From Octopus sinensis (lineage: Eukaryota), in NCBI RefSeq assembly GCF_006345805.1, contig NW_021836143.1, positions 62,001-126,000 of the forward strand: a stretch of 64,000 nt of DNA, read 5' to 3'. Below the pieces are notes generated by a model. That model did not search any database. It had not been told where the DNA came from and worked only from the letters and a program-made list of their open reading frames with translations. Shown here one piece after another: positions 1 through 64,000 of this stretch (positions are counted from its first letter, which is position 1; every line of letters starts with the position of its first letter). The position numbers and the translations under genes are program-made.

Positions 1-752
1 CAAACTTTCCGAGTCTAACCATATGCAGAGAGTGAATGTGTGCTCTTCTTTGCTGTCATATCTCATGAATGAACCTTTTTTTTTGGACCGCATAAAGACT
101 GGTGATGAAAAATAGGTTCTTTATATAAATGTCAAGTGCTGAAGACAGTGGGTAGGGAAAGGAGAAACACTGGCAATCCAGGCTAAAGAAGGTCTTCACA
201 CATGTAAGGTGTTATTATCTGTTTGGTAGGACATGAAGGTTTAGTCCACTTCAAACTTTTAAACCCCAACCAAGCAATAACAAAGGAGATCTACTGTGAG
301 TAGCTTGAGTGGCTTAAGTCAGCACTAGGAGGAAAATGGCCATCTTTGGTTTGTAGATGAAAAGTGTTTTTCCATCAGGATAATGCTCAGCCACATACAG
401 CAAGGATGACATCCCAAAGGCTGGATCAGTTTGAATGTGAAATGATGCCCACCCACTATATTTGCTGGGCATTGCTCCATCTGATTATCATTTATTCTGC
501 AGTCTCCAGCATCATCTGGACAGAAAAAAATATGAATTCTGTAGACGAGGTCAAAACAGTACTTGAGGAACATTTTTCATCACGGACAAGTGAATTTTGG
601 AAGACAGACCTTGCAAGTCTACCAGATAGATGGAAGAGTATTGTAGAAAATGAAGGAGAGTATATTTTAGATTAATAAAGAACTTTGTTTATCTTAATTT
701 TGAAAAATAGAAGAAGTATAAAAAAGACTGCATTATTTATGTTATGACCTAA
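1..752 (+). mobile_element. Decayed mariner (Tc1/mariner) transposon, 3' part with right TIR
   Basis: Conceptual translation through stops and frameshifts gives FLDRIKTGDEK, LHTCKVLLSVW, VFFHQDNAQPHTA and LPDRWKSIVENEGEY, which are mariner DD34D motifs. It ends in a TIR-like ...cattatttatgttatgacctaa followed by TA (753-754). Confidence 0.92.
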
Positions 753-25991: not shown

Positions 25992-26201
25992 AATATGTGA
26001 ATAAAAATAGAAAGTTTATACAGAAAAATTTAGAATGTTTGATAGAAGATCTGCTAATTATTTCTTTTTACTGCATTTTTAACTAAAAAGTATATATTTA
26101 TTGTTTTCATCACTTATGTGGCTTTATTAAGTTCTTTTGAGTAAAACTGAAAATAGACAAAAAAATGAGAGAAACAAAGAAAGCAAAACAGATAGGGAGA
26201 G

Positions 26202-26241
<40 letters not shown>

Positions 26242-26282
26242 TGTGTGTGAGAGAAAGAAAAGTAGTAAAAATAATTACTTAC

Positions 26283-26411
26283 AGAAAACCGTAACTTTGA
26301 TTACATGGCTGACTGCGTTAGCTACCCCGTTGTCTGCAACACACTCATAGAGGCCATTACAGTAACGGGAAATGTTGCGGATCATCAAAACTTCTCCAGT
26401 CATGCCTATCC
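26283..26411 (-). CDS. Exon of a lachesin/DIP/IgLON-like Ig-superfamily adhesion gene (C-terminal half of an Ig domain)
   Basis: 129 nt, phase 1-1, acceptor tgttgtgttccag and donor gtaagt. Encodes (R)IGMTGEVLMIRNISRYCNGLYECVADNGVANAVSHVIKVTVF, which has the Ig E-F-G strand pattern GE.L.I.N....G.YECVA.NGV. Confidence 0.92.
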
Positions 26412-26465
26412 CTGGAACACAACATAGAAGACATGTATTCAGGCCCTCTCCAGTCATGCCTATTC
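26412..26465 (-). CDS. Possible in-frame 54-nt 5' extension of the exon through a duplicated acceptor
   Basis: A second acceptor, ttgtattacag|GAATAGGCATGACTGGAGAG, lies 54 nt upstream, in frame and without stops. It adds 18 aa: RIGMTGEGLNTCLLCCVP then GIGMTGEV. Confidence 0.4.
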
Positions 26466-26989
26466 CTGTAATACAATATACAACACTTAGTCAGAAACAG
26501 AATCACCACAAACATCGATACACAAGACGATAACAAAAAAAAAAAATAACGACAAGGAAGAAACTTAAGATCAATAGAACGATATCCCCAGAACAATGTG
26601 AAGAAACTATTTGCTTGAAAACCTAGGAATATTTCCTAACAGTACATACACATCGTAAAATATCTGATACAATAATATTGTTAGGTTAATGATTCTATGT
26701 TTATTAAAGGAGACAACGCTGTCAATTTTACAGTAAATATTGGTAACTGAAGTCTTACTAAAATAGTGTGAAATTTATAATATAAGATGCTTATATTGTA
26801 TGCAATCTAACAGTGACAGTTGAAATATTACAGTTAATATTAATGATTTAAGTGTTGCTATTTGTGAATGCTGACGGAAAACCGTGGTGGATGAAGCTCC
26901 ACATTTATTACATAGAAAATGATGAACTGATATATATATATATATATGCTTTTATATACATATATATAAAAGCATGATGGATCACTAGC

Positions 26990-27158
26990 GACAACACATT
27001 CTTTATTTTCTCTCCTTGTTTCTCTCTGTGTTCCTTTCTGTGGAAGAGTGTAGGCTCGAAACATTAAAGACTTTTTCACTTCCCGAGCGTTAAACTAATA
27101 CATCTGTTTGTTGTCTACACCACCTGTCTTCATCTTTTGTTTTTTTAGTGAATTCTTC

Positions 27159-27162
<4 letters not shown>
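26990..27162 (+). mobile_element. Short interspersed repeat carrying a Penelope-type minimal hammerhead fold, ending in (TA)n/(TAGA)n
   Basis: cttt-CTGTGGA-a-gagt[gtag]gctc-GAA-ACAT-T-aaag at 27034-27069, followed by a CT-rich tail and microsatellite (27163-27252). Confidence 0.55.
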
Positions 27163-27237
<75 letters not shown>

Positions 27238-28167
27238 TAGATAGATAGATATATAAAGACATTGTTATTAAAAGAGCTTGTAAACACAGAAATGAACATT
27301 TATATAAGATCACTTATTGCTGCAATAATATGTGAACATTAAAAAAAAAAAAAAACCCACATTGATTGTGATTTCTTATAGAATTAATCCATTTCAGTAT
27401 TCATTGATAAATTGCTAACAGAACCTCACCTCATTAATATACAAGTGCCATGAATCTAAGTTCTATTAACTACAAACTTGCTAATCTTTATCATCTAAGA
27501 TCAATTTATTTCCACAAGATTCATTCCTATGCTGGTGCATTTCTCAAGATATTCATCATGTGTCTGAAGGTCTGTGAAAATTAATTGAGTTTTATCTACT
27601 TATTGCTTCCAAAGGCATAAAAAAATGTAAGAAACAAACTCTACTTCTTTTGATTATGACCTAAGCAATATTTGTATGATCATCTCTATTCCAAGTACAA
27701 TAGTTAACCTACTAGTTTACAATCCAATTTTATAACCCTGGCTGGTTTTACCCTTTAAGAATTCCATTACATCACTACAGATTACTTCAGATAACGGCAA
27801 TTCTGCATTATCACTACTATAGAATTAATACTTCAACAATCCTATTTTATCACCATAGCTGACTTAACAAACCACTAAACTTATTTTATCTCTATATAGT
27901 TGGATTTAAAATCTATCAAACCTATTTTAAGACTTATTAATATTCTTAATTCATGAAAATAGGAAACTACATTCTTAAAATCCTAACCTATTATTATAGT
28001 TGCATTTACAAATCTGACCATATACTCTCATCAAAGCCAACAGCTCAGTTAAACGATTCCAGAATATGAAAGCAATGAAAACAAATTCAATTTGAAAGGC
28101 ATATGATATTGGATATCATAATAATTATTCCTATATTGCAAAGACAATAAGATTGGATAGTTTAGAT

Positions 28168-28207
<40 letters not shown>

Positions 28208-28815
28208 ACTCTGCTGTTGAAGATGATGTATGAGCATTCAACTTTTGCCAAACGAACTGCACAAATGATTTGTTTATAATGGTCAAATGTCTGTGCAACA
28301 CATTAACTTACTCTCCCCATCAAGTTGGTGTTGTTTGAACAGGTGCATGGTGTACCACTCATCAGGAGTTGAAGTGATTGCAGAGCAATGTAAGATAAAA
28401 TGTTTTGTTCAAGAACATAAAGCATCACCTTGTCTAGAAATTGAAATCACAATCTAGCAATCATGAGTGCAACATATTAAATACGAAGCCATGCACCCTC
28501 ACCATATATATATTAGTATTTGTTTTTATGTTCACTTATGATAAAAACAATTTTACAATAATCTTAAGGGTGACTCCATGCCTTTGTAGAGTAAAAGTTT
28601 ATTAATCTTTAACAATAGTATTGACAGTGACTTCGAAGTATCAGCCAGCTAAACCTTCATTAGACTGTGATGCATTAAGTTAATCATGGGTTTATATAGC
28701 CTCTGCTGAGATAAATTTTTTTTGCAGATTTGTGGTGTTCGGTTGAATGGTGATTAAACTTCAAATTAAGCTGTGATGGTAAGGTGTTGTTGAGAAAATT
28801 TTATTGATTAAATTT

Positions 28816-29232
28816 GAGTTTATGCCGTTCAGAATTTATTCATGTGCTTAGAAATTTGTAAACAGGTGTGTATATTTAGATGTCTCAGCTTCAGGTCATG
28901 GATTAATTGGTAGTGGTTCACTAAAAAGAAGTGGGTAGGTAGAGGAAGTTTTTTGGTCAGTGGATGTGTCATAAGTTTGAATTATTATTGGTTTGATTGG
29001 ATTTAATTCCTTGCTTTGGCAACGTAAAGGTCAAAGTTCTAAGTTTAGTTCAGCACTTAAAAGTCTTAGTAATCTTGTAATGGAACGGCATAAACTCATC
29101 CACTGACCAAAAAACTTCCTCTACCTACCCACTTCTTTTTAGTGAACCACTACCAATTAATCCATGACCTGAAGCTGACACATCTAAATATACACACCTG
29201 CTTACAAATTTCTAAGCACATGAATAAATTCT
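28816..29232. repeat. Recent inverted duplication, 136-bp arms, with a permuted 15-bp block
   Basis: 28831-28966 versus 29097-29232: reverse complement with 2 mismatches seen. 28816-28830 is the exact reverse complement of 29083-29097. Confidence 0.95.
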
Positions 29233-29541
29233 GCAAGCTACTTTTCCATATGCCACTAATGTTATTCAGGAAAACATTCAGTCCTATAGGGCCTATATAG
29301 CTTGAGAGGAGTGTCATCTCATGTTCCATTTTCATGTTGCTAAGAGTTTGAATGGATATCAAATGATATCTTTCCAAATGCTCTGAGAGTTTCAAAATTT
29401 GGACTGGCCCCTTTTTATGAACCTTGAAAAATGAAAGACAAATGAAATCTTGGTGTGATTTGAACTTCAAGAACAGTGAGTTGGAATAAACACCATGAGG
29501 TAGTCTATCTAGCTTGCTACTAATATATGAATTAGTTTGTG

Positions 29542-29545
<4 letters not shown>

Positions 29546-29601
<56 letters not shown>
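29546..29601. repeat. (GA)n microsatellite
   Basis: Uninterrupted GA run. Confidence 0.95.
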
Positions 29602-29605
<4 letters not shown>

Positions 29606-29674
29606 CACGTAAATTTATTTACTCATGCATATATTTACATAATAAAATAAAAAAAATATAAACATATATATACA

Positions 29675-29910
29675 TCATCATCATCATTTAACGTCCGCTT
29701 TCCATGCTAGCATGGGTTGGACGATTTGACTGAGGTCTGGCGAACCAGACTCCAATCTGATCTGGCAGAGTTTCTACAGTTGGATGCCCTTCCAAATGCC
29801 AACCACTCCGATAGTGTAGTGGGTGCTTTTACATGCCAGTTTGGTGGTACTGGCAATGACCACATCCAAATGGTGCTTTTTACATACCACCTGCACAGGA
29901 GCCAAAACAT
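29675..29910 (-). mobile_element. SINE family B (RTE-type 3' end, (GAT)n tail)
   Basis: catcatcatttaacgtccgctttccatgctagcatgggttggacg...ggatgcccttccaaatgcc matches the other family-B copies. Confidence 0.85.
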
Positions 29911-29949
29911 GTGTGTGTATATATATATTTATATAAATATATATACATA

Positions 29950-30298
29950 TACTCTTTTACTTGTTTCAGTCATTTGACTGCAGCCATGCCGGACTACTGC
30001 CTTTAGTCAAACAAATCAACTCCAGGACATATTCTTTGTAAGCCTAATACTTATTCTATACGGGAATGCAAACACACCGACATCAGCTGTCAAGCGATGG
30101 TGGGGGGACAAACACACATACACATATATATCCAACAAGCTTCTTTCAGTTTCCGTCTACCAAATCCACACACAAGGCTTTGGTCAGCCTGATGCTATAG
30201 TGGAAGACAACTGTCCAACAAGGTGCCATGCAATGGAACTGAACCTGGAACCATGTGGCTGGTAAGCAAGCTTCTTACTGCACAGCCACTCTTGCACC
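29950..30298 (-). mobile_element. tRNA-derived SINE, family A (diverged)
   Basis: Similar to 51669-52075 along its length. Confidence 0.85.
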
Positions 30299-31683
30299 TA
30301 TATATATATATTGAGAAGAAGTGGGGGACTGCACACATATGATTGCTCTCTCTCTCTCTCATATGTACATAGAGAAAAAAAGGAGAGAGAAGCCTTGAAT
30401 ATGTGAGACAAATAGCAATAATTTAGTTAAGTGGAAGAGAAACATATAAATGAAAAATAGATGAGAGAATGAGAGATGGTGGGGTTGAGATGGAGAGTCA
30501 GAAATTTATCAAACTTCAGTAAAATATTTAGTTTTCATAAATGTATTTTTTTCTCCCTTTATTACAGGATGAATTTGATTTTTATACCTTATCTTTTAAT
30601 GCCAACGTATATGTATTATCATTGATTTTCAATAAACTTTGTATAAATGGGAAAATTTTTTGAATATATAGTTCAGTGTTATTTTTGGCTTGTCTGGTCT
30701 AATAAATTCTATTGAATAGTAGAAGAGACATATAAAAGAAACAGCAATGTAATAACCTTTTCACATAAGAATAAATATTACTAACCTAAAGAAAAGTAAA
30801 GAAAAATATACAGAAAATTTATTAACAAAAAACAAACAAACTATTAACTACCTAACTTTAATAAAATTATGTTAAGATAAAATATTTACAAAAACAAATG
30901 TCATTAAAAATAAAAAAACTAATGAGGAAATATTTTTTAAAAATATACTTTAAAGATCTTTAAATGAGGATTGTAAAAATATATTTAAGAAATTAGTCAA
31001 TAACAAAAGAAGTGTAAATAGTGAAAAATGCTGGAGATATCTTAAATTGAATGTAATAAATGAGATATGCCAAAGGTTTAGCAGGAAATTTTCTCCTTTG
31101 CAAGTTAAATATGGAAGAATTATTTTGATAAGAAGTGGGGAAAAAGAGGTGAAAATAGAAAAAAAAAGAGAAAGCCTAAATCCTTTATTTTTCTGATGCC
31201 ATCTATCTCCTTTTCCTCCAAATGTCTTTATTTCCTTTTCAATTCTTAAACATTTTTTTTTTAGCAGTTCCATTCTTTTAGCTTTGCAGATATTTCAGTG
31301 TTACTGACTACCACTGAGGTTGATGAAATCCCCTTCCTTGAAATTATTATACATATTTTATGGAAATAAAATGTAAAATATAATAGATTTCTTGTACAAC
31401 ATTTTAAAATGTAGTTTTAGATTGATTTATGATAATAGTTGTGAGCAAAGAAAGAAAACCATCACCTACAAATCTATTTTTCTGTAAAAGCTTCACTAGT
31501 CACTACTACTATATGTGGAGCTTTTCTTTTATATACTTAGTAATAAACCACTTCTAAGATAACAATTTCTCCAACATGTAGACTGTGTGAATTTTTGCTA
31601 GTATAGCTTTGTGTTATATCAGAAGAAGATTAGTAAAGAAACAGCAGTTCATATTTTAGATAGGCTTTATTTATATCTTTTTA

Positions 31684-32071
31684 CTAGCAGTATCGCCCAG
31701 TGTTGCTCGGGTTTGCTTCAACCCTTTAGAATTGGAATTTTTGAACAGTAAAAATTTTGCATTATGTAGCTTGTTATTCTCTTTAAATACATTTTTCTGG
31801 TTGAAATACACCGAAAAATGGCAACACAGAAGTAAAAAAATCATAAAAAATAGGGATTTTCATAGAAAAAAAGCACCTTTTTGATGTAAATAATTTTTTG
31901 TCTTAACATGGTCCAATTTGATTTTTCTCTTACGGAAGGAAGAGCAAGCCTTCTTCTATCATACTCTCAATTTTGGTCAACTTGTACCACAGGGACTCGG
32001 AGGAGATAGTGTTAGTTGAAGGCTAACAAACCTGCCATACACAGACAACTTCAGCTTTATATATAGAGAGA
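31684..32071 (-). mobile_element. Non-autonomous Helitron
   Basis: The minus strand begins A|TCTCTCTATATATAAAGCTGAAG and ends CAAACCCGAGCAACACTGGGCGATACTGCTAG|T: 5'-TC, 3'-CTAG, insertion between A and T. Confidence 0.8.
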
Positions 32072-33158
32072 TTATGGAAGGGCATGGGGTGTAGTGAGTA
32101 GAAGATACTTCAATATACGATTGAAAATTTTGGGGTCTGTGTAAAGGTTAAAGCAAACTTGATACCAGTAGGATTTTAACATAATGAGATTAAATCAAAT
32201 ATTAATTTAAAACATTAGCAGAAGGCCTCACACTTTTGAGGAGAGATAGTCCATTGTATCAACTACAATACTTGATTGGTACTTTATTTTAGCAGTTTAG
32301 AGGATAGTTAGTACTGATGAACTTGTAGGCCCTCCCAGAATGATGCAATAGATATTCAGCTAGTTCAGATGTAAGTCAATATTTTCAGGAAAAACATTGC
32401 TGAGAGAAAATTCTAAAGAGAATCGGTTTTGAGAGGAAGTGTCAAGGGCAGGATCTGGTAGTGATGATAATGAAAATAGAAACAAATGCATCTAGTGGGC
32501 TTGGTGGAAATGCTGCACAGTTATCAAGTTAGAGTAAGAGAAAAGTATGAACTAAAAGTTGAAAAGTTTGATGACATATATGAGACACTGGCTTTTTTCT
32601 TTTCTTTTTTTTGGGGGGGGGGCCCTATCAATACTAATCTGCCTGAAACTGTCCCTGTTTTTGATACAAAGCCTGTTTTAGAATGTTTATATTTAAATTA
32701 AAACATTCCATAATTTTATGTAAGACACTTTGTTAAATTATATTTTAAGCATGAAATTAATAACAACAAAGTTATTTTCTAAATGCTACCAAACTCTTGA
32801 TTATTTTAAAATTGAATTAAGAGTTATAGACAGTGCCATGTATTTCATTAAGAATATGGTCTTAAGTGAGTTGCCTTAGGGAAATACATAGATAAAATAT
32901 CATGTAGTGACAGACAGCAACATCTATGCATTTTGTTATTATATATGAACACTATGCTTTGTTATGCCATATTTCTGGAGTTTTATATTTACAATGGAAT
33001 TGTTCAACGACAAATCATACTTCTATTCCATTACTAAAAGCCAACATATTTTTATTTCTGCTTTTGAGAAAAATCTGAAATCCTTATAAATAAATCATTG
33101 GTTTGTATATGCACGTGAGAGCACATACACACACACACACTAAAGAGTAGAGCAGTAA

Positions 33159-33296
33159 TATAGTTGCATGCAGTTAAATTAGATGTATGGTCATAGAGTG
33201 ACCAAAGGTTTTGCATCCATAATGTCTAACGCTTTACGTATGTGAAACCACTGGTCACTCTATGGCCAGACACATATCTAACTGCATATAACTATA
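33159..33296. mobile_element. Foldback MITE flanked by TA
   Basis: ~46-bp imperfect TIRs tatagttgcatgcagtta..gtcatagagtgacca / tggtcactctatggcc..taactgcatataactata. Confidence 0.7.
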
Positions 33297-33407
33297 TATA
33301 TATATAATTGAAAAATAGGATCAAGTCTTTATAAGAATTTATCAAGTAGTTAGTGTGAAAAACCTCATAAGGGAAAAATCCATCAATTATTCCTCTTAAA
33401 TATATGT

Positions 33408-33581
33408 ATTTATATTAAGGGCATTACTATTCATAAATGCCTCATGCTAGGAGGGACTCAAAGTCAAAACTAGCATAATAAATAAACATTGTACAACTTG
33501 TTTATTTATTATGGTAGTTTTGACTTTAAGAGTCCCTCCTAGCATGAGGTATTTATGTATAGTAATGCCCTTAATATAAAT
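33408..33581. repeat. Near-perfect palindrome, ~81-bp arms, 10-nt loop
   Basis: 33408-33488 versus 33499-33581: reverse complement with a few mismatches and one small indel. Confidence 0.93.
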
Positions 33582-34158
33582 AAATGAATATACACACACA
33601 CACACACACCATGCCTAAGGTTCTTAACTTGGTGGTGTCATTAAGGGTGCAGATGTGACAAATAGCATGTCATACATATTTTTAAGCTTGGCAGAATCCA
33701 CCCCTCTCCACCTTTGACCTTAGTAGGGTTTTTTCTAGCTGAGTTAGAAAAGAGAATAGACCCAAGTATTTAACACATTTGTTATTAACTGTGAGAGGAT
33801 GAAAATCAAGGATTTACACACAGTACCTGTTTTAACATCTCTGCTAATTGGCTACTGATACATCCCCCCACACAGATACATATATAAATACACACATATA
33901 TACATAAACGCACACACACACAATATTATACAGCTATATCTATTTGCAAATTCAGAGAAATATATACATTACAAACATAAATGAATAAACACACACATAA
34001 TACATATAGACAAACATGTATTATACATATATAACAACTTAATGTGTAATCAGGATATAGCAAAAAATTTAATTGTAAGGTAAATTATACAAAGATATAA
34101 TATATATTGTAGATAATATTAAGTTATTAATACTTAAGAGACATCAAGAAAATCTTAC

Positions 34159-34308
34159 TTTCATTTTGCTTTTGGTCGCTTATAGACCTGCGATACCAGG
34201 TCACATTAGGATGCGGTGTTCCACTTACATTGCAGACAAGGCTTATTGTATCCCCCTCTTTTGCAGTTTTATCTCTACTTGACAAATCTGCGTTAAGTGT
34301 TGGCTGGA
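34159..34308 (-). CDS. Exon of the same Ig-superfamily gene (N-terminal half of the Ig domain)
   Basis: 150 nt, phase 1-1, acceptor tttaaatttcag and donor gtaaga. Encodes xQPTLNADLSSRDKTAKEGDTISLVCNVSGTPHPNVTWYRRSISDQKQNE, with the Ig B-strand Cys, the P.P.V.W motif and two N-glycosylation sequons. It joins in frame (A|GG = Arg) to 26411. Confidence 0.93.
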
Positions 34309-35314
34309 CTGAAATTTAAAAAAAACAAAAAAAAAACATTAAAATACTGAAGAAAAAAAAAAACAAAAAAAAGTAGCTTAAATTTTAGACAGCTGACCAA
34401 AGAATATAATTCCAAATCCAACATCATTATCATTTTTGTTTAATGTCTACCTTCCATGATAGCATGAGTTGGATGGTTTGATAGGAGCCAATCAGGTAGA
34501 AAACTACACCAGGCTATTTTATGGTTGGATGCCCTTCCTAACATCAACAACCCAGCAGAGTGGACTGAGTGGTTTCAAATCCAACAAAGCATATAAATTT
34601 GAATGCATCAGTTTACCTTAATGACAAATGACACAACTTGACCTTTAATTCTGAGTAACTTTTATTATTCATTTTTATTATATCAAATGAGACTGCTGTA
34701 TGACAGTTGTCACTTCTAGAATTTTCTATGTATTTATCAGCCTATATTAAATATACTTTGTTAATTTAAATAATAAAGGTGGAGTGACTAACAAATAAAC
34801 TTTATTAACAAAGAAATATTGGAGAAAAACTTTTGTCAGCAGTGTGAAATAAAAATTAAAACACTAATCTAAAATATTACTGCTATTGCAAAGTCTAAAC
34901 TGAGTTACTGACACCACATTTTGAGAAGAATACATTTGATTTATTGCTGTAAAACATGGGAATTCAAAGCGACATAAATCTCCACATTCAAAAATATGAA
35001 ATGCTTTATTTTGTATGCCACCAAACAAATTATATATGTCGGTCCAGGTGTTATCAGCTGGGAATATTTGATAAGACTATACAAAATAGGATATAATAAT
35101 CTATCTAAGAAGAGAGTGAGAATGAGCAAGAAAGAGAATGAACAATTGCAATGCGGCTTTCATTCAAATTTTTCATTTAAAATTCAAGTTTGAAAAAGTA
35201 ATTTAAAGTATGAATGACAGTCACAAGATCTAATGGGGGAACACATTACATCATAAAGTAAATAAAAGATGAGAAATAGTATAATCTTGCATTGTCATGA
35301 ATATATAAACGAAT

Positions 35315-54150: not shown

Positions 54151-54919
54151 TATGTATATGTATATAAACGTAAGTGTACATATTACTATTTGCAAGAATG
54201 TATGCATTTATAAGTGAAAATGCATTGGCGTACATTTATTGGTAAGATCATGTACAGATGCCTGTTTATAGTAGTAAGAATATCTGCATGTTATGTGTGT
54301 AAATATGCACCCAGCGGTAAGGGATTACGTAGTTTATGTAGACTGCAAATTATTTTCTCGAAAAGCTAAGATGACTGATTGGAAATCCATTATGAGTGAG
54401 TATTCACTCCAGTCTGATAACTGAAGTAGTTAGAAATGACCAAAATACTTCCATGCATTTAATCTGGCTTATAGGTTCTAATTACAGTGTTTAGCTTTTA
54501 ATAGGTGAGTTAGCTTACTGTCTTTTTGGCATCACTATGATTATCATCCAGTAATATTGGTAATATAACTCCCATTTTCTTGTATGGACTGAATAGTTTC
54601 TACTTATCGGCTATTCCATTAATTCTTGATAGTCTATTGCTATTTACATGCATATCATCATCATCATCATCATGTATCATTTGTTTAGTATTCATCTTTC
54701 AATAGTGACATGTTCGTACATATGCAAATTACAATATTTTTCTATATGCCTCAATCTTTAATCATCCTATTCATGAAACTCAGCATTCTGAGGCCCTATT
54801 TACGGAACATTCAGTTTTACTTGAATATACAAATTTATGAGAGAAAGAAATTAGAAATTTGAATTATATTCCTAAATGTGCTTATCATGAGTTGTTACAG
54901 AAAAGATAATTATTTATTC

Positions 54920-55137
54920 GATCGTGGCCGTCTGCCAGCCCCATCTGGCACCTGTGCCGGTGGCATGTAAAAAGCACCCACTACACTCACGGAGTGGTTG
55001 GCGTTAGGAAGGGCATCCAGCTGTAGAAACACTGCCAGATCAGACTGGGCTTGGTGCAGCCTTCTGGCTTCCCAGACCCCAGTGGAACCGTCCAACCCAT
55101 GCTAGCATGGAAAGCGGATGCTAAATGATGATGATGA
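54920..55137 (+). mobile_element. 5'-truncated family-B SINE
   Basis: aggaagggcatccagctgtagaaac...accgtccaacccatgctagcatggaaagcggatgctaaatgatgatgat. Confidence 0.88.
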
Positions 55138-58001
55138 TAAAAAAATATTAATACAGATATAATACACTTTTCTGATTTAACCTTGTCTTGTTTCTAAAAT
55201 ACTTATGAATGGGATGTTCTTTGCTGCAATCAGATACTTCAGCTTAAATTGAACTTATTCAGACATCTGAATTTACAAAGACACTTTACTGCACCATAGA
55301 ATCAACCACTATGATAATGAAGATGGTGACAGCATCTCTTATTTAATATTAGAGAAAAGGAAATGTGATGCTTCCATACCTTTCTTAAAATTACAAGATA
55401 ATGTAGATAACATTGATTGTTTCAAAACATTATCTGCCTGCCTACCTACATACCTATCTATCTAGCTACACACAGATGCAAATATACAAAGGAAGACAGG
55501 CAGACAGATACATATTTTGTATTAATAGCTCTGTTCAGAAGAAATAGGAGGAAAAAAAGTGACTTTCTGTTTACCTAGACATGAAATTGCATAACTAGTC
55601 CATATCTCATTGTATGCTAACTTCTTGATGCATAATTAATGATAGAATCAGAGTTGCAAGTTAGGTAAGCTAAGTCTTAAATATAATATATAATAATTGT
55701 AATAGTAATAGTCTATGGCAACTGTCTTGAGAGACAGTGGAGTTTTGCCTCACTGATTAATTAAGATTCAGGTTGTACCCCAACAGCTGATGGGCAAGTG
55801 ATTTCTCTATTCTTGTTGCCTCTTTCCCCAGTTGAATACAAGTGATACCTCTAAGGTGTGAACTTAGTCTCTTTGAAAGGCTTTCTTGAGTTACCCAGAA
55901 ATCAAAAACATTTTTTGAGGCTCATTAATGAACTCCTGATTAGCATGTTTGGTACCAATTTGGTTGCAGGAATTAATAAAGTATAAAGGAATCTACTCTT
56001 GGTTTATGATAAGGTTTACTACCTTACCCTTGTCTCACAAGGTGTAAGGCTTTTAGCTGGGTATCTAACCTGGGACAGTGTCTCATATATGGTACCCTCA
56101 GCAAAAGCCAGATAATCTCTGGACTTATTTCATGCAGGATTATCATGCATCAAAGAAGTGGCCGAGGTACTACCCACTCTTTTATAAAATAATTAGTGTA
56201 TGTTAGTAACATTTTTGTGACATATTACAAGTACTTATTTCATGAAAGTTAAAATCAACTTAAGATTTGAATAACATTGTAGGGAGATAGCATGCTACTG
56301 TTTCTGCCCTGTCTACTTAGCTGTCATTAATATTGGCAGTACTAATGATAAGAATAACAGCATTCTCATAATTAACTATAAGTCATTAGAAAGAGTGGGA
56401 GGACTATTTAAATTTATGGCATTCACTTTATATCAATCACTACAACTCCTAATTCTCAGTGGTACTAGTTCAAAAACAGCAATACCATAAATAGCAATAA
56501 AAATATTCGTATAGCCATACAGTCAGTGATTGTAATCATGAATGCAAACACATGTACACACACACGACTGCATATATATATATATATATACATGTGTGTG
56601 TGCTTATATATGTCTTATGTATATATAAAACACACACAAGTACATATATACTGATTTTCTTTAGTTGGACAGTTTTGAAGCTGTCGTTCCAAAAGTTTGG
56701 GTTATAAGGGGTGTCTTAAAAATTAATTGATTCCATTAGCTGGTAAGTGATGACTGACACACACTTTAGCACTTCAAAATATGGAAATAAATTTTCATTA
56801 GTCAATGATTTATTTACACCAAAGAAAAAAAAAATCCTTATTTAAATGTACTGAACCAAAATATCCTTTGAACAGTAGTAACATTTCAGAAAATTATGCC
56901 TGCTTTCAAGTAAAGATTGTGCATAAAAGTGATGACATTCAGTTTGCTAATGACTAGATAACATCAACACAAGCAAAGTAGATACATTTCTTGAAGGATG
57001 TGTCACGTCAAAGAACAACATCCATTATACATGTTGTTTTGTATTAGTACATTAAAAAAACTCAAATATAGATACATCCAAAGTGATTTAAAAAATGTTA
57101 CCATTTAAGTGCTTACATCTGTTTACGGCTATTGTAAAGAAATAGTTCTCTGGTAAAGAGATTCTTCCTGTCAAAGGGTCTCCTTTAGACAATTGCAGTG
57201 TCTTTACATTTCTTTTCTGCTTTGCTTCCTTTTATTTTGATACAGGTAGTAGAAAAGGACACACAAAACAAGGTACACAGTTTATGATATTAGTTTAAAG
57301 CTAGAAAGAAGTTTGGGGCAGTGGCTCTTCTTCAAAGAAAAGCAGAGAAGAAAATCAGAAATATAAGTAATGAAAAAACAGGAAGAGAAAAAATAATCCC
57401 ATTGAACGATATTACAGAATTAGTCAAAGAGGTATGGACATGTGTGTGTGTGTATTTATGTTTGTATGGGGATGGTGTGAGTTCAAATAGGTGTGTGGGT
57501 GTGCATGCATTGCTATATGGAATCAATGGTGAATGGAAGAAAGTGAAGAAATTAGATTTCACTAAAGAGAAGCTTAAAGGGAGACAATGGGTTGGAGTCA
57601 GTAGTTATTTGGTAAAGAGAAGTATATTTAAATGTGGATATAGAACTACAGAAACAGGCTTAATGTGTATGGTGTACACATTCATGTGCACATAGGGCTA
57701 TGTGTATGTGTAGGGTAGTGTACATATGTATGTGGGTAATGGAGGGTGTATTCATAAATGTTGTCTGTATATGTTTTTGTAGGTTTCCTTGTATGTTCCT
57801 TGTATGTTCTGGAAGTGCACTGCAGTGAGTGTGTGCATCTGTAGTGCAATTTGCGTATGCTGTATTTGTTCAAATAGGTGTGTATGTGTGCATATGTGTA
57901 AGTGCATGTAGTGTGTTGCTGTGCAGCAATATAGTGGATGGAAATGAGGTGGCGTTTATATGTAGGGAACAGAAATGTAATAGTGTGTATTTATTGCTGT
58001 T

Positions 58002-60037: not shown

Positions 60038-60103
60038 TTAGTATAGTGGTAAGAATCCCCGCCTGTCACGCGGGAGACCGGGGTTCAATTCCCCGCCGGG
60101 GAG
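60038..60103 (+). pseudogene. 5'-truncated tRNA-Asp(GTC) retrocopy
   Basis: ttagtatagtggtaagaatccccgcctGTCacgcgggagaccggggttcaattccccgccggggag matches eukaryotic tRNA-Asp. The 5' acceptor strand (TCCTCG) is missing and there is no poly-T terminator. Confidence 0.88.
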
Positions 60104-60116
60104 GCTAACAAATTAT

Positions 60117-60316
60117 CCGTGCCGGTGGCACGTAAAAAGCACCCACTACACTCATGGAGTGGTTGGCGTTAGGAAGGGCATCCAGCCGTAGAAACATTGC
60201 CAGATCAGACTGGGCCTGGTGCAGCCTTCAGGCTTCCCAGACCCCAGTTGCACCGTCCAACCCATGCCAGCATGGAAAGCGGACGCTAAACGATGATGAT
60301 GATGATGATGATGATG
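60117..60316 (+). mobile_element. 5'-truncated family-B SINE fused behind the tRNA-Asp copy
   Basis: Family-B body with a long (GAT)n tail. Confidence 0.9.
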
Positions 60317-61867
60317 TATTATGTGTTATAAAGCTAATTTTAGTGACTATTATATTATTTTGTGAAGCATTATCTTCAGCATGATTCTAGAATTCGATTA
60401 CCATGGCTTATATATTTATATAATGTTCATATCTCTATATAAGAAGTTGTTTCTTCATTAAAGAATTATTCCAAAGTCTTTAACCTCTTCCAATAACAAA
60501 TAAAAGGTAGATTACAGGACTGAATTCCTTAGAAATGAATGAATGGTTGACTTATAGACTTACTGTGCCTATATTTAACCTTATATAATAATGCAACTAA
60601 AGAATGAAATACAGGAAGAAGGTGAAATTGAGATCAGAGTATGAAGGATATGATCAGCAATTGTTCACTAGCAGATAAATTATAGATTATATTTATTGAG
60701 GGTAGGGAATAAGAGCAGGTCAAATCACTGCAGATGCAATAAATATAATTTTACAAGGTAAATAATTTACAAAGATGAGAATTTACATGTAATAATAGTT
60801 TAATAAGGAACGCTTACGCAACTAAGATATAACTATACAAAACTGAAGACTCGGTGTAGTGCATATTGAAGTAATCTTTTAACTATGGAATGTTAAAGGG
60901 CACTTCAACTTAATAAAGTTGTAGGGCATCTTGTCTCTATGACCACTTTCATCTAACTGCCTAGCAATATAACTTGCTCTACATCCATACATATATATAT
61001 ATATATATGCATGTGTGTGTATGCATGTATCATCATCATCTTTTAAACATCAATGTTCCTATTGGCATGGGTTGAACAGTATAGCAAGCTATAATGGGTT
61101 CAAGGACTGCATTGTGCTTCACTGTCTACTTTGGTATGATCTCTTTGTCTGGTTGCCATTCCTAATACCAACCACCTTACTATATGCACTGAGGGCTTTT
61201 CCAAAGAAGCAGCATTAGAGAGGTTGCCATGTAGCTTGCAGGAATATGAAATTCAAAATTGCCAGGAGATGAAGGGTTTAATTATGATAGAAGGAGCAAG
61301 ACTAGAACAAGTTTCTCGCAGTAGAAGTGCTACATGTCTTACTCGCATTTTAGAAAGGGGGGATTCTGACATGTAATTCTGAAAGAAAATTAGTTGCAAT
61401 ACCTGTTTAACAATCAAGGTTTTCCTATCAAGATTATGAAAATAAAAATACCATTATCACTCTGAGAAAGAATCCTCTGTAATAATAATAATAATCATCA
61501 TCATCATCATCATCACAATCATGATCATAATCATCATCATTATTTAGTTTCCCATACAGATGACATGATCTAGTGAGCTACAGGGTTGTATTAACACCCA
61601 ATGTCAGTATTGGCATGGTTTTTTACGGTTGGATACCCTTCCTAATGTCAAACCCTTTACAATGTGTACTGGGTACTTTTATCATGCATCTGGTACTAGA
61701 GAATTGACCAAGTAACTTGCAAGACAGAAAAAGAACAGGGCAAAAGCACCTTCTTGTCTAAGTTAGGGAAGCAACCAAATACATATTAACATCTACTGTT
61801 TCCATTAATTCGTAAATAACTTGTTCACATTAATACATGCAGCAATTATTTACAAAATACATGTGCT

Positions 61868-62102
61868 GGCACAGGTGCCAGATGAGGCTGGCAGATCGTG
61901 GCTGTCTGCCAGCCTCGTCTGGCACCTGTGCCGGTGGCACGTAAAAAGCACCCACTACACTCTCAGAGTGGTTGGCGTTAGGAAGGGCATCCAGCTGTAG
62001 AAACACTGCCAGATCAGACTGGGCCTGGTGCAGCCTTCTTGAACTGTCCAACCCATGCTAGCATGGAAAACGGACGTTAAATGATGATGATGATGATGAT
62101 GA
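61868..62102 (+). mobile_element. 5'-truncated family-B SINE with a 28-bp foldback at its 5' end
   Basis: 61868-61895 pairs with 61905-61932 (one mismatch). The body runs on to a (GAT)n tail. Confidence 0.88.
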
Positions 62103-64000
62103 CACTAATTATATTTTAGATATTGATATGGGCTTCAGTTCTAAAATGAAACATGTTTGTATATTTACAATGAGGAATCTTTCATTTCTACACTTAGACT
62201 TTTGAGAATAAACAATATCTGTTATATGTTTTATTCCAGGTATTGCATTGTGTGGCTCTTCAAGATTCATTGTGTCAAGTAAAACATAAATTATCTCCTT
62301 GAATGTAACAGCTTAGAGATAAGCTTTCTACCAATGAATTATTACGATTTATCCACTCAATTCTGCAAAATAACTAGAAATGTCTCAAAGAGTTAAAATG
62401 ATTAAAAAGGTGATTATTCAATCCATTTTACATGCACATTCATCTGGTAGTTAAACAAAAAAAAAAAAAAAAACCTTCTATGTGAAAAGTTACCATTTGG
62501 TATATCTGAGAGGCAAGTCCCATTAATCTAACATGTCTTAGCCTCCAAGTCTTTCAGTAAGTCAGTGTTTTGATTTATAATCACAGTGGCTGATGCATTT
62601 CAGTAGATTCAAATAGCAAAAGTAAACTTATATTAAAGCTACTGAGTAAATTAAATGATATTAACAGAGATACAATTATTTTTTGAACACTGTGAATTTA
62701 GAGTAAAGATTTTTGCCAGCATGACATGACAGTCCTGGTTTAGGACGAATGTTGCTGTAATTTAGCCCCAGGAGACATCGTCTCCAGCTGGCTATACGAC
62801 ACGATCTGTGTCCTTATATTTTCAAACAAGGGAATCTAGCACCCCCACTCAGTTTAAAACAATATTTGTGTATCGCGATTTCCAGGTTATTTCCTTTCAT
62901 CAGCACAGAATAATTGTTCGGCTAGAGGTGGCGCTGCCAAATTCGCATTCAAAATATATAGTTTTCAAAGTAATAACTAGTCACTAATCAATAAATTGAA
63001 TTGTGAATTTAGTCAAAAGCAGGTAATTTTGAAGTAAAAGACTTGAAGAATTATAGCATTAAAATAGCGATTTGTGTACCACTGGAAGGCATGATGTTGT
63101 GGTGTTAGTTTGAGTGATCTCTTCAAAGATATGGTGTGTTAAAGACACAATTTTATATCAAAGTGAGGCAGATATCATCTCAGCAAGTGACTCATGAAAA
63201 CACTAGATATGTTTCAGCCTTGTTGGGTCTTATCAATGACATGTACCTTGCTGTTATGTACCTAGTTGAAATGTGTCCTCTTTGATATTCAATGAACTGA
63301 ATATTCACTGATATTGTAGAAAGCTTGTCAGGCTGAATAAAATTGGTGAATATACACTATTGTTATATGTGATGTGGATTTTGTCTGAAATAAAAATCTG
63401 TTGATAGATGTATTGAAAGCACAATATATATTGAAATGAGTTGAACATTGTCCCAACAGTGATTCGCAAGAATGTCACATGTGTTTTGGCTTTCTTGAGC
63501 ATTGTAAATAATGTAAACTTATTTGTGCACCAAGTTTCATTCAGCCAAGCCAGTGTGTCATTGACAAGGCCAAAAAAGGTCACAATATGTCAAACATTCT
63601 TGTGAGTTACTGCTGGGGTAATGCTCACCTTGCTCCAATATATACTGTGTTTTTAACACAACGTGTACAAAGAGATCTTTCTCTTGGACAAAACCACAAA
63701 GTCATTTTAATGGTGAATATACATTAGGTACGGTACACAGATGACAGTCTTAATTTAATACAGTTTCAATTGTGTACACTGAGCATATCATTATACTAAC
63801 AGTTAACAATCAACTTAGATAAGATAAAATTTCTAGCTTTATCATATAAAAGTAATGAAAGCTATTTTCCTCTTTGGTAGTTTTGCATTGGGGAAATTGT
63901 AGCATCAAATCATTGCTCTGAAAAACGACCACTAAAGAGTTCAATGATTTGCCTACATAAGTGTTTGAAAGTCATAAGCATTATACGTTGTAAACAAGAT

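What the first reader, a model, noticed from the sequence alone, without database searches (positions are those of the whole stretch)
26392..26480. Tandem-duplicated splice acceptor creating an in-frame Cys-rich 18-aa insert inside the Ig domain
Seen: tatattgtattacag|GAATAGGCATGACTGGAGAG and tatgttgtgttccag|GGATAGGCATGACTGGAGAA are two copies of the intron end plus 20 exon nt, 54 nt apart. Both AG acceptors survive, both give Arg at the junction, and the interval has no stop. The upstream AG yields RIGMTGEGLNTCLLCCVPGIGMTGEVL, adding three Cys between the C and E strands. Inference: this is a way to create a new isoform by acceptor duplication, which could alter folding or allow disulfide-linked dimers of a recognition molecule.
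Basis: partly seen in the sequence, partly recalled or inferred. Interest (0 to 1): 0.7.

Follow-up and report, generated by a model that had tools for sequence, protein, structure and literature searches.

The report
Duplicated splice acceptor in octopus lachesin
An octopus nerve-cell adhesion gene (lachesin, IgLON/DIP family) has two copies of one intron-exon junction 54 bases apart, so splicing can add or omit an 18-residue cysteine-rich loop in its second Ig domain; the switch is real and older than the octopus-cuttlefish split, but both isoforms are already in public annotation and what the loop does is untested.

Summary
On the minus strand, a 40-nt block (intron end plus the first ~20 exon nt) occurs twice, 54 nt apart, at 34/40 identity. 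Both copies end in AG, both give Arg at the junction, and the 54 nt between them has no stop.

The gene is a cephalopod lachesin. The window's two exons match the Octopus sinensis RefSeq models exactly.
- Spliced mRNA contigs from a cuttlefish-like species carry either the long form (with the insert) or the short form.
- O. bimaculoides RefSeq isoforms X1 and X2 differ by exactly these 18 residues.
- An intronless Argonauta retrogene preserves a copy of the long mRNA.

The duplication therefore predates the octopus-decapod split. The 54-nt segment differs at only 4/54 nt between octopus and decapods, against 25% in the flanking exons. It also contains the branch-point-like motif and pyrimidine tract of the downstream acceptor, so it is probably constrained both as coding sequence and as a splice signal.

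AlphaFold places the insert as a low-confidence loop in the D-E hairpin of Ig2, with the rest of the fold intact. Its function, including any role for the cysteines, is untested.

This is an undescribed member of a known kind of event; interest is modest.

The parts
34159..34308 (-). Exon A: first half of Ig domain 2 (A-C strands, VQPTLNADLSSRDKTAKEGDTISLVCNVSGTPHPNVTWYRRSISDQKQNE). It ends in phase 1 (…GAAA|gtaaga) and is the shared donor for both acceptors.
   Evidence: tblastn of O. vulgaris lachesin P0273, 96% identity. Identical to O. sinensis XP_029657685.2 and XP_029657686.1.
26466..34158 (-). Intron (about 7.7 kb) when the upstream acceptor is used. When the downstream acceptor is used it extends to 26412.
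26490..26494 (-). Branch-point-like CTGAC (yUnAy), with its A at 26491, 26 nt before the upstream exon start. Candidate branch point for the long isoform.
   Evidence: Motif match only; function is inferred.
26447..26486 (-). Repeat copy A: 21 nt of intron end (gtgttgtatattgtattacag) plus the first 19-20 exon-like nt (GAATAGGCATGACTGGAGA).
   Evidence: (family D1).
26466..26467 (-). Upstream acceptor AG (ttacag|GA). The first exon nt of the long isoform is 26465.
   Evidence: Used in the O. sinensis, O. vulgaris and O. bimaculoides X1 models. The equivalent junction is seen in decapod mRNA contigs.
26412..26465 (-). Alternative 54-nt segment, which adds 18 residues (IGMTGEGLNTCLLCCVPG). It is coding in the long isoform and intronic in the short one. 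It differs at 4/54 nt between octopus and decapods and at 0/54 between two decapods.
26438..26442 (-). Branch-point-like CTGAA, with its A at 26439, 28 nt before the downstream exon start and inside the alternative segment. No AG lies between it and the downstream AG. It is identical in decapod mRNAs and lost in the Argonauta retrogene.
   Evidence: Function is inferred.
26393..26432 (-). Repeat copy B: intron end / pyrimidine tract (gtcttctatgttgtgttccag) plus the start of the constitutive exon (GGATAGGCATGACTGGAGA).
26412..26413 (-). Downstream acceptor AG (ttccag|GG). The first exon nt of the short isoform is 26411.
   Evidence: Used in O. bimaculoides X2, the Argonauta model and the cuttlefish-like short mRNA contigs.
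26283..26411 (-). Constitutive part of exon B: D-G strands of Ig2 (IGMTGEVLMIRNISRYCNGLYECVADNGVANAVSHVIKVTVF). Donor TTTTCT|gtaagt.
   Evidence: AlphaFold strand assignment.

Best explanation
The window holds the two exons of Ig domain 2 of an octopus lachesin, a three-Ig protein of the IgLON/DIP family. By exact amino-acid match the source is Octopus sinensis or a very close relative.

An old local duplication copied about 40 nt across the intron/exon-B boundary. The intron now ends in two complete 3' splice-site units 54 nt apart, each with a branch-point-like motif, a pyrimidine-rich tract and an AG.

Splicing from the same donor (34159) has two outcomes:
- To the upstream AG (first exon nt 26465): a long mRNA whose protein has 18 extra residues, IGMTGEGLNTCLLCCVPG. 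These are a second copy of the D-strand peptide followed by the translated pyrimidine tract of the downstream site.
- To the downstream AG (26411): the short form.

Both forms are made in coleoid cephalopods, and the arrangement predates the octopod-decapod split. The 54 nt serves as coding sequence in one isoform and as branch point plus pyrimidine tract for the other. That dual role is my explanation for its near-invariance even at synonymous positions.

In the protein the insert sits in the D-E hairpin at the edge of the Ig2 sandwich. It is predicted to be a flexible loop that leaves the fold intact.

Shown:
- the repeat, the frame and the two acceptor sequences;
- use of both junctions in relatives;
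- deep conservation of the segment;
- the position of the insert in the model.

Inferred:
- that isoform choice is made by choice of branch point and U2AF binding site;
- that the origin was a duplication;
- that the short form is also made in this species;
- any functional effect of the loop or its cysteines.
For: 1. Repeat. 34/40 identity at lag 54, about 1e-6 expected by chance, and no other copy in the window.

2. Gene identity. The window's exons are identical to O. sinensis XP_029657685.2 and XP_029657686.1, including MIRNIS. Named hits are lachesin, LSAMP and OBCAM homologues. The best PDB relatives are Drosophila DIPs and vertebrate IgLONs.

3. Upstream acceptor in use. Logan contigs of about 2 kb carry uninterrupted 438-476 aa ORFs that join exons lying 7.7 kb apart in the window, so they are spliced mRNA. 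They contain the insert. The O. vulgaris, O. sinensis, O. bimaculoides X1 and Acanthosepion pharaonis models also contain it.

4. Downstream acceptor in use. P0285 and P0293 are mRNA contigs of the same cuttlefish-like species without the insert. O. bimaculoides X2 equals X1 minus 18 aa. The Argonauta model also lacks it. Among the listed members of the cuttlefish cluster, 18 contigs are long and 4 short.

5. Retrogene. Argonauta GAB1600296.1 is 402 aa encoded in 1209 contiguous nt and keeps an 18-aa insert at this position. Its parent gene spans 265 kb.

6. Conservation. The insert differs at 4/54 nt between octopus and either decapod, against 69/276 in the flanks (p=0.004). Third codon positions differ at 2/18 against 45/92 (p=0.003). 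Two decapods differ at 0/54 although 24/276 flank sites differ.

7. Splice signals. The upstream site has CTGAC at -26. The downstream site has CTGAA at -28 inside the insert, 14/20 pyrimidines, and no AG between -36 and -2.

8. Structure.
- Short form: D strand ERIGMT and E strand VLMI, with pLDDT above 90.
- Long form: residues 185-202 have pLDDT below 50, between a 3-residue D strand and the E strand. The rest of Ig2 stays near or above 90.
Against: - No transcript data from the window's own species were available. The O. sinensis models are automated predictions and show only the long form.
- Contig counts are not expression levels.
- The repeat is not a clean 54-nt tandem: 13-14 nt do not align. 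Pyrimidine-rich intron ends also resemble one another somewhat for compositional reasons.
- I could not obtain orthologous genomic DNA. Whether the intronic half of copy A is also repeated in decapods is therefore unknown.
- Protein-level selection on the insert is not demonstrated. dN/dS is about 0.5 on only five changes.
- In the retrogene, where splicing constraint is gone, the insert evolves at dN/dS of about 0.9 and loses two of its three Cys. This suggests the peptide itself is only weakly constrained.
Confidence: 0.8

Rival explanations
1. Tolerated by-product. The downstream acceptor makes the functional protein. The upstream AG is used only because it is a competent, in-frame site, and the long protein has no function of its own. 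The segment is conserved only because it holds the branch point and pyrimidine tract of the downstream site.
For: - The insert is largely a translated pyrimidine tract.
- AlphaFold gives it pLDDT below 50.
- dN/dS within it is about 0.5 on five changes, and about 0.9 in the retrogene, where two Cys are lost.
- The CTGAA and the pyrimidine tract are exactly conserved.
Against: - The long form is the majority among assembled contigs in two decapods (18 long vs 4 short in one species; only long contigs listed in the other).
- It is the form modelled in O. sinensis and O. vulgaris.
- The upstream AG, the frame and the absence of stops are kept in both lineages.
- The 20 exon-like nt at the 5' end of the segment, which are not part of the downstream splice signal, are also conserved (17/20 between octopus and decapods).
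- The two differences between the copies in the window are both synonymous.
Confidence: 0.13
2. The extreme nucleotide conservation reflects a separate RNA-level element, such as a regulatory protein-binding site, a structure that controls acceptor choice, or a duplex partner for A-to-I editing. Coding plus ordinary splice signals would then not be the explanation.
For: - Synonymous sites in the insert are far more conserved than in the flanks.
- Exon B as a whole has lower pS (about 0.35) than exon A (0.8-0.97).
- Cuttlefish-like contigs differ only at A/G recoding-type sites in this gene. This fits the heavy editing known in coleoids (PMC8382921).
Against: - Folding the 181 nt around the two acceptors gives no unusual stability (z = +0.69).
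- No inverted repeat partner lies within about 500 nt.
- The repeats are direct, so they cannot pair with each other.
- No editing data were examined for this site.
Confidence: 0.15
3. The insert descends from an older, pan-molluscan Cys-bearing cassette micro-exon that fused to exon B by intron loss. The resemblance to the exon start would then be secondary, not a duplication.
For: Homologues in oysters, mussels and gastropods have alternative inserts at exactly this intron position. Nearly all carry a Cys: CxYT in bivalves, SEFCPG in gastropods, against LCCVPG here.
Against: - 18/20 identity of the insert's first 20 nt to the exon start, plus 16/21 in the preceding intron ends, in the same register, is what a duplication predicts and fusion does not.
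- The insert ends in a working acceptor, ttccag.
- Other cephalopod paralogues (OBCAM-like and LSAMP-like) have unrelated inserts or none.
Confidence: 0.06
4. Assembly artefact or chance similarity.
For: None beyond the short length of the repeat.
Against: - The same insert is present in proteins or mRNAs from O. sinensis, O. vulgaris, O. bimaculoides, Acanthosepion pharaonis and Logan contigs from several SRA runs, and in diverged form in the Argonauta retrogene.
- The chance expectation is about 1e-6.
Confidence: 0.01

Closest known systems
Alternative 3' splice sites at intermediate distance (3-100 nt), as analysed by Akerman & Mandel-Gutfreund 2007 (PMC2018619)
   Same: Two AGs share one donor and lie an in-frame distance apart. 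The segment between them is conserved. The pyrimidine tract of the downstream site lies within, and adjoins, the alternative segment.
   Different: Here the two sites are visibly copies of each other (34/40 nt). The upstream site therefore did not arise by point mutation of a cryptic AG. Conservation spans octopods and decapods.
NAGNAG / tandem acceptors (TassDB PMC1669710; PMC2279118)
   Same: Two acceptors close together give in-frame insertion or deletion isoforms.
   Different: NAGNAG sites are 3 nt apart (up to about 12-18 nt for 'adjacent' sites) and share one branch point and tract. Here the spacing is 54 nt and each site has its own candidate branch point. PMC2279118 reports selection against such events in structured protein regions; this event lies inside an Ig domain, although at an edge hairpin.
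Short intragenic tandem duplications that create usable splice sites (Rogers' model; Hellsten et al. 2011, PMC3265369). From my own memory, not retrieved here: human disease alleles such as a HEXB intron 13/exon 14 junction duplication that adds residues in frame.
   Same: A small duplication spanning or containing splice signals is recognised by the spliceosome. The duplicated sequence is then handled by splicing rather than disrupting the gene.
   Different: Hellsten et al. describe duplication of an exonic AGGT that creates a new intron and leaves the protein unchanged. Here an existing intron-exon junction was duplicated, and the result is a stable, anciently conserved pair of protein isoforms.
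Alternative cassette inserts at the same Ig2 intron in other molluscan IgLON homologues (RefSeq isoforms of Magallana gigas OBCAM homologue X1-X10, Mytilus, Haliotis, Aplysia)
   Same: The position in the protein is the same, between ...KE(R) and (I/V)G..GE.L.I.N. The inserts are in frame and usually contain Cys.
   Different: From the isoform combinations, those inserts look like separate micro-exons (25 and 23 aa in oyster, 8-10 aa in gastropods), but I did not see their genomic DNA. Here the insert is contiguous with exon B and is made by acceptor choice.
Mini-exon peptides in Ig domains of type IIa receptor tyrosine phosphatases, and splice inserts of neurexins, which set synaptic partner choice (from my own knowledge, not checked here)
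   Same: Short alternative peptides in or between Ig-type domains of neuronal adhesion receptors.
   Different: No binding data exist for the cephalopod insert. In solved IgLON and DIP complexes the trans interface is Ig1-Ig1 (my knowledge of 6DLD and 6EG0-type structures), whereas this insert is in Ig2.

Membership tests
IgLON / DIP ('Wirin') family of neuronal adhesion proteins (lachesin) | Three extracellular Ig (I-set/C2) domains | tested here: met
   This applies to the full-length orthologues only; the window holds just Ig2. Precomputed Pfam hits are I-set, Ig_3 and V-set. AlphaFold models show three beta-sandwich domains with pLDDT above 90.
IgLON / DIP ('Wirin') family of neuronal adhesion proteins (lachesin) | Closest relatives are named or solved IgLONs, DIPs or lachesins | tested here: met
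   The sources name the hits lachesin, LSAMP-like and OBCAM homologue. PDB phmmer gives DIP-theta 6EFZ at 2e-49, OPCML 5UV6, neurotrimin 6DLF, and IgLON5/NEGR1 6DLD.
IgLON / DIP ('Wirin') family of neuronal adhesion proteins (lachesin) | N-terminal signal peptide and C-terminal GPI-anchor signal | tested here: inconclusive
   Hydrophobic terminal helices are predicted at residues 2-14 and 421-437 of P0105. No signal-peptide or GPI predictor was available.
Alternative 3' splice-site event | Transcripts exist that join the same donor to each of the two AGs | tested here: met
   Met in relatives. The cuttlefish-like mRNA contigs P0282/P0287 (long) and P0285/P0293 (short) share an identical N-terminus. 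O. bimaculoides X1 and X2 are the same pair. This could not be tested for the window's own species because no RNA-seq was available.
Alternative 3' splice-site event | Each site has AG, a pyrimidine-rich tract and a plausible branch point; the segment is in frame | tested here: met
   CTGAC at -26 with 10/20 Y upstream; CTGAA at -28 with 14/20 Y downstream. The 54 nt equals 18 codons with no stop. These are motif matches only; branch-point use is not testable here.
Splice-junction duplication as origin | Two direct copies, each covering the intron end plus the exon start, in the same register | tested here: met
   26447-26486 vs 26393-26432, 34/40 identical. That splits into 16/21 intronic and 18/20 exonic.
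Splice-junction duplication as origin | Head-to-tail tandem structure over the whole period | tested here: inconclusive
   Only 37/54 identical at lag 54. The 13-14 nt at the 5' end of each period do not align without gaps, and TRF makes no call. This could be old divergence, or filler sequence at the duplication junction.
Splice-junction duplication as origin | Same duplicated structure in orthologous genomic DNA | not testable with these tools
   The exonic copy is present in decapod mRNAs (15-16/20 between copies). No orthologous genomic DNA was obtained. The gene ranges were too long to fetch, exon B is absent from L001, and two metagenome scans were empty.
NAGNAG / adjacent tandem acceptors | Acceptors 3 nt (at most about 18 nt) apart, sharing one branch point and tract | tested here: not met
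   The spacing is 54 nt and the candidate branch points are separate.
Cassette micro-exon | The alternative segment is flanked by introns on both sides | tested here: not met
   The 54 nt runs straight into exon B with no donor between them.

The most novel reading that the evidence does not exclude
The 54-nt segment may be more than an accident of duplication. It could be one instance of a conserved, mollusc-wide programme in which alternative Cys-bearing peptides are inserted into the D-E hairpin of IgLON Ig2 to change how these adhesion molecules pair or cluster. Examples would be cis-dimers through a free cysteine, or an altered Ig1-Ig2 geometry. In cephalopods the choice would be set by a near-invariant sequence that is both coding and splice signal, possibly open to regulation by RNA-binding proteins or A-to-I editing. 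That would amount to a splice 'code' for an IgLON/DIP-family receptor, which to my knowledge has not been described for this family.
Probability: 0.2. Interest if true: 0.55.

Novelty: new member of a known kind. Interest (0 to 1): 0.3.

Why it matters
This is a clean natural example of how copying a few dozen bases across an intron-exon boundary creates a second, self-sufficient acceptor and so a second protein isoform. The pair has been kept since before octopuses and cuttlefish diverged.

It also shows one stretch of DNA under two constraints at once: coding sequence in one isoform, and branch point plus pyrimidine tract for the other.

The gene belongs to the IgLON/DIP family of neuronal recognition molecules, in animals with very large nervous systems. 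The same site in Ig2 carries alternative, Cys-containing inserts across molluscs. That gives a concrete, testable hypothesis about isoform-specific adhesion.

Both isoforms are already present in automated annotation, and alternative 3' splice sites are commonplace, so the finding is an illustrative case and not a surprise.

Tried and rejected
- My first by-eye alignment suggested the repeat filled 51-54 nt of the period. The lag-54 profile showed 37/54, with a solid core of only 40-41 nt, so I dropped the claim of a clean 54-nt tandem.
- TRF at minimum score 30 does not report the repeat.
- The first homologue searches with the spliced 93-aa domain and with the exon-B ORF gave only 3 and 2 hits. 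The key orthologue P0105 came from the exhaustive HMMER search. A spliced window protein could not be submitted to that tool, so I used P0001.
- Orthologous genomic DNA was not obtainable:
  - L001, a cuttlefish-like ENA contig, has exon A but no exon B within 10 kb.
  - The Argonauta, A. pharaonis and O. bimaculoides genes are too long to fetch: 265, 116 and 193 kb.
  - P0158 is not on record.
  - Two exact-pattern scans of JGI metagenomes found nothing.
- RNA secondary structure as the reason for conservation: the 181-nt fold is no more stable than shuffles (z = +0.69), and no inverted partner lies nearby.
- The L007 flanks were read for a poly(A) remnant, and no clear one was seen.
- Literature searches for a description of this event or of cephalopod lachesin splicing found none. 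A search for the HEXB junction-duplication precedent found nothing usable, so I cite that from memory only.
- I considered and rejected NAGNAG-type wobble, a cassette micro-exon, mutually exclusive exon duplication and assembly artefact (see membership tests and rivals).

Full report
**Observation**

The gene is on the minus strand. Reading 26100-26900 shows ...ctgactaagtgttgtatattgtattacag|GAATAGGCATGACTGGAGAGggcctgaatacatgtcttctatgttgtgttccag|GGATAGGCATGACTGGAGAAGTTTTGATG..., ending at ...ACGGTTTTCT|gtaagt.

The repeat finder reports the two copies as 26447-26486 and 26393-26432: 40 nt, 85% identical, 54 nt apart. The 17-mer core occurs only twice in the window, against 0.15 expected. 34/40 identity at any lag of 20-200 is expected about 1e-6 times in the window.

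The repeat is not a clean 54-nt tandem. At lag 54 only 37/54 positions agree, the 5'-most 13-14 nt of each period do not align, and TRF does not call it.

The upstream exon ends at 34159 in phase 1. The first exon nucleotides are 26465 and 26411, and the exon ends at 26283. Both junction codons are Arg. The long reading is RIGMTGEGLNTCLLCCVPGIGMTGEVL, with three Cys and no stop. In frame and open is only mildly unlikely by chance, about 0.14.

**What the gene is**

The two exons together encode one I-set Ig domain. A first word-indexed search found P0001. It is 97% identical and spliced at the downstream acceptor, and its Ig2 region proved identical to O. bimaculoides lachesin.

An exhaustive HMMER search with P0001 found P0105, a 438-aa three-Ig protein that contains the insert. 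Searching with P0105 gave named relatives:
- lachesin from Octopus bimaculoides and Argonauta hians;
- LSAMP-like and OBCAM-homologue proteins across molluscs.

Cluster members show that the window's amino acids are identical to O. sinensis XP_029657685.2 and XP_029657686.1, including MIRNIS. O. vulgaris and O. bimaculoides have MIHNIS at that position. The window is therefore O. sinensis or something very close to it.

The closest solved structures are Drosophila DIPs and vertebrate IgLONs. A review groups this family as 'Wirins' (PMC10084454).

Only the two Ig2 exons lie in the window. The orthologous genes span 116-265 kb.

**Are both acceptors used?**

Yes, in relatives.

Logan contigs L004-L006 are about 2 kb long. 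They carry uninterrupted 438-467 aa ORFs that join exons separated by a 7.7-kb intron in the window, so they are spliced mRNA. All three contain ...KERVGMTGDGLNTCVLCCVPGIGMTGEVL....

The 90% cluster of the cuttlefish-like species also contains Acanthosepion pharaonis proteins. Within it, contig proteins with the same N-terminus come in two lengths:
- 476 aa with the insert (P0282, P0287, P0291);
- 458 aa without it (P0285, P0293: ...KERIGMTGEVL...).

Among the listed members, 18 contigs are long and 4 are short.

O. bimaculoides RefSeq X1 (351 aa) and X2 (333 aa) differ by exactly the 18 residues, as do the older models of 287 and 269 aa. O. sinensis and O. vulgaris models have the long form, and the Argonauta model has the short form.

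A further witness is Argonauta GAB1600296.1 (P0159). It is encoded by 1209 contiguous nt, so it is an intronless retrogene. It carries IGMTEEDQDTPNQYCVPE at the same place. It was therefore copied from a long-isoform mRNA.

An assembly artefact is excluded because the insert recurs in at least five species.

**Age and constraint**

Codon alignment of the window with the decapod mRNAs gives these figures.

| Comparison | Insert | Flanking exons | p |
|---|---|---|---|
| Octopus vs decapod L004, all sites | 4/54 | 69/276 | 0.004 |
| Octopus vs decapod L004, third codon positions | 2/18 | 45/92 | 0.003 |
| Decapod vs decapod, all sites | 0/54 | 24/276 | 0.019 |

Synonymous sites are near saturation in exon A (pS 0.8-0.97) and at about 0.35 in the rest of exon B.

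The duplication therefore predates the octopod-decapod split, which by my own recollection is of the order of 270 million years ago. The segment is constrained at the nucleotide level, not just the protein level.

dN/dS inside the insert is about 0.5, on five changes. In the retrogene, which is free of splicing, the insert evolves at about 0.9 and loses two Cys, while the flanks stay at 0.25.

My reading is dual constraint. The segment is coding in the long isoform. It also holds the branch-point-like CTGAA (A at 26439, -28), the pyrimidine tract (14/20 Y) and the AG of the downstream site. No other AG lies between -36 and -2.

The upstream site has its own CTGAC at -26. Each copy is thus a self-sufficient 3' splice-site unit, and isoform choice is probably a choice of branch point and U2AF site. 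This is an inference.

A local RNA structure is not supported (z = +0.69).

**Protein consequence**

AlphaFold2 was run with a 101-sequence alignment for each form.

- Short form (Argonauta P0157). The junction sits at the start of the D strand (ERIGMT), followed by a tight turn and the E strand (VLMI). All of this has pLDDT above 90.
- Long form (P0105). Only ERV remains as a short D strand. Residues 185-202, which are most of the insert plus the second IGM, have pLDDT below 50. The E, F and G strands and the other domains stay near or above 90.

The insert is therefore an enlarged D-E hairpin loop on an edge strand, preceded by a duplicated D-strand peptide. Nothing here tests folding in vivo, disulfide formation or dimerisation.

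**Family context**

The same mid-Ig2 phase-1 intron position carries alternative inserts in many molluscan homologues:
- the oyster OBCAM homologue uses two inserts of 25 and 23 aa in all combinations (isoforms X1, X4, X5, X6-10);
- mussels are similar;
- gastropods have 8-10 aa (SEFCPGTN, SELCPGND).

Almost all of these inserts contain a Cys. This raises a weak alternative origin, a fused ancestral cassette. It also suggests the more interesting possibility of a conserved isoform code at this site.

**Comparison with known kinds**

This is an alternative 3' splice-site event at intermediate distance (compare PMC2018619).

It is not:
- a NAGNAG site, because the spacing is 54 nt;
- a cassette exon, because the segment is contiguous with exon B;
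- a case of mutually exclusive duplicated exons.

Its origin fits the known ability of small intragenic duplications to supply working splice sites (PMC3265369). It also resembles junction-duplication disease alleles that I recall from memory but could not retrieve.

I found no paper describing this event, but both isoforms already exist in RefSeq.

**Verdict**

- Novelty: a new, undescribed member of a known kind.
- Interest is about 0.3.

Noticed in passing
L007 2001-3209 (Argonauta hians GCA_054771915.1, BAAFZT010000015.1:822216-827424): A 'lachesin-like' gene (GAB1600296.1, 402 aa) is intronless, whereas the parent gene spans 265 kb. It looks like an old retrogene made from the long-isoform mRNA. 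Its ORF is intact, and it lies inside the span of another gene called on the opposite strand. No clear poly(A) remnant was seen downstream.
   Followed up: partly
Logan mRNA contigs of the cuttlefish-like species (proteins P0156, P0282, P0285-P0288, P0291, P0293); window codon at MI[R]NIS in exon B (about 26380-26382): Contig proteins of one species differ only at D/G, K/R, I/V and N/S positions. All of these are A<->G changes, the signature expected of A-to-I RNA editing in coleoids. The window has genomic CGC (Arg) where the decapod mRNAs read CAC (His); O. vulgaris and O. bimaculoides also have His there.
   Followed up: no
Homologues P0160-P0272: The mid-Ig2 intron position is a hot spot for alternative inserts across Mollusca: two 25/23-aa inserts in oyster and mussel isoforms, and 8-10 aa SEFCPG-type inserts in gastropods. 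Nearly all of these inserts contain a cysteine.
   Followed up: partly
Window 26283-26411 vs 34159-34308 (codon alignment): Exon B has much lower synonymous divergence from decapods (pS about 0.35) than exon A of the same domain (pS 0.8-0.97). The nucleotide-level constraint therefore extends beyond the 54-nt insert.
   Followed up: no
L003 1-300 (ENA metagenome scaffold ZHAN22-2_SAMN18200486_METAG-scaffold_589574): This is a GC-rich animal contig carrying the homologous exon (…VGTGEVLVLRNVTRSLGGLYECVADNG…). It has a roughly 115-nt tandem repeat whose last unit runs into the acceptor of that exon, so junction-proximal repeats occur at this intron end in another lineage too. A second tandem repeat follows the exon.
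   Followed up: no
Window 34380-34470 (minus strand), just upstream of exon A: The O. bimaculoides-derived MetaClust protein P0001 starts with MEGDDNDVGFGIIFL, encoded about 100 nt upstream of exon A and joined through a small intron. In the window the corresponding ORF is interrupted (ATGGAAGGTAGACATTAA...). That upstream mini-exon is probably a prediction artefact or is not conserved.
   Followed up: no
Window 60039-60095 (+), with similar ORF-like repeats at 54913-55193, 60136-60386 and 61809-62104: There is a partial tRNA match (Rfam RF00005, 36.5 bits; ARAGORN finds no intact tRNA) next to a sequence repeated at least three times in the window. This is consistent with a tRNA-derived SINE family.
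   Followed up: partly
Window 361-672 (+): This ORF fragment resembles the C-terminal part of a mariner/Tc1-type transposase (…HQDNAQPHTA…), probably a decayed transposon in the lachesin intron. I recognised it by eye only.
   Followed up: no
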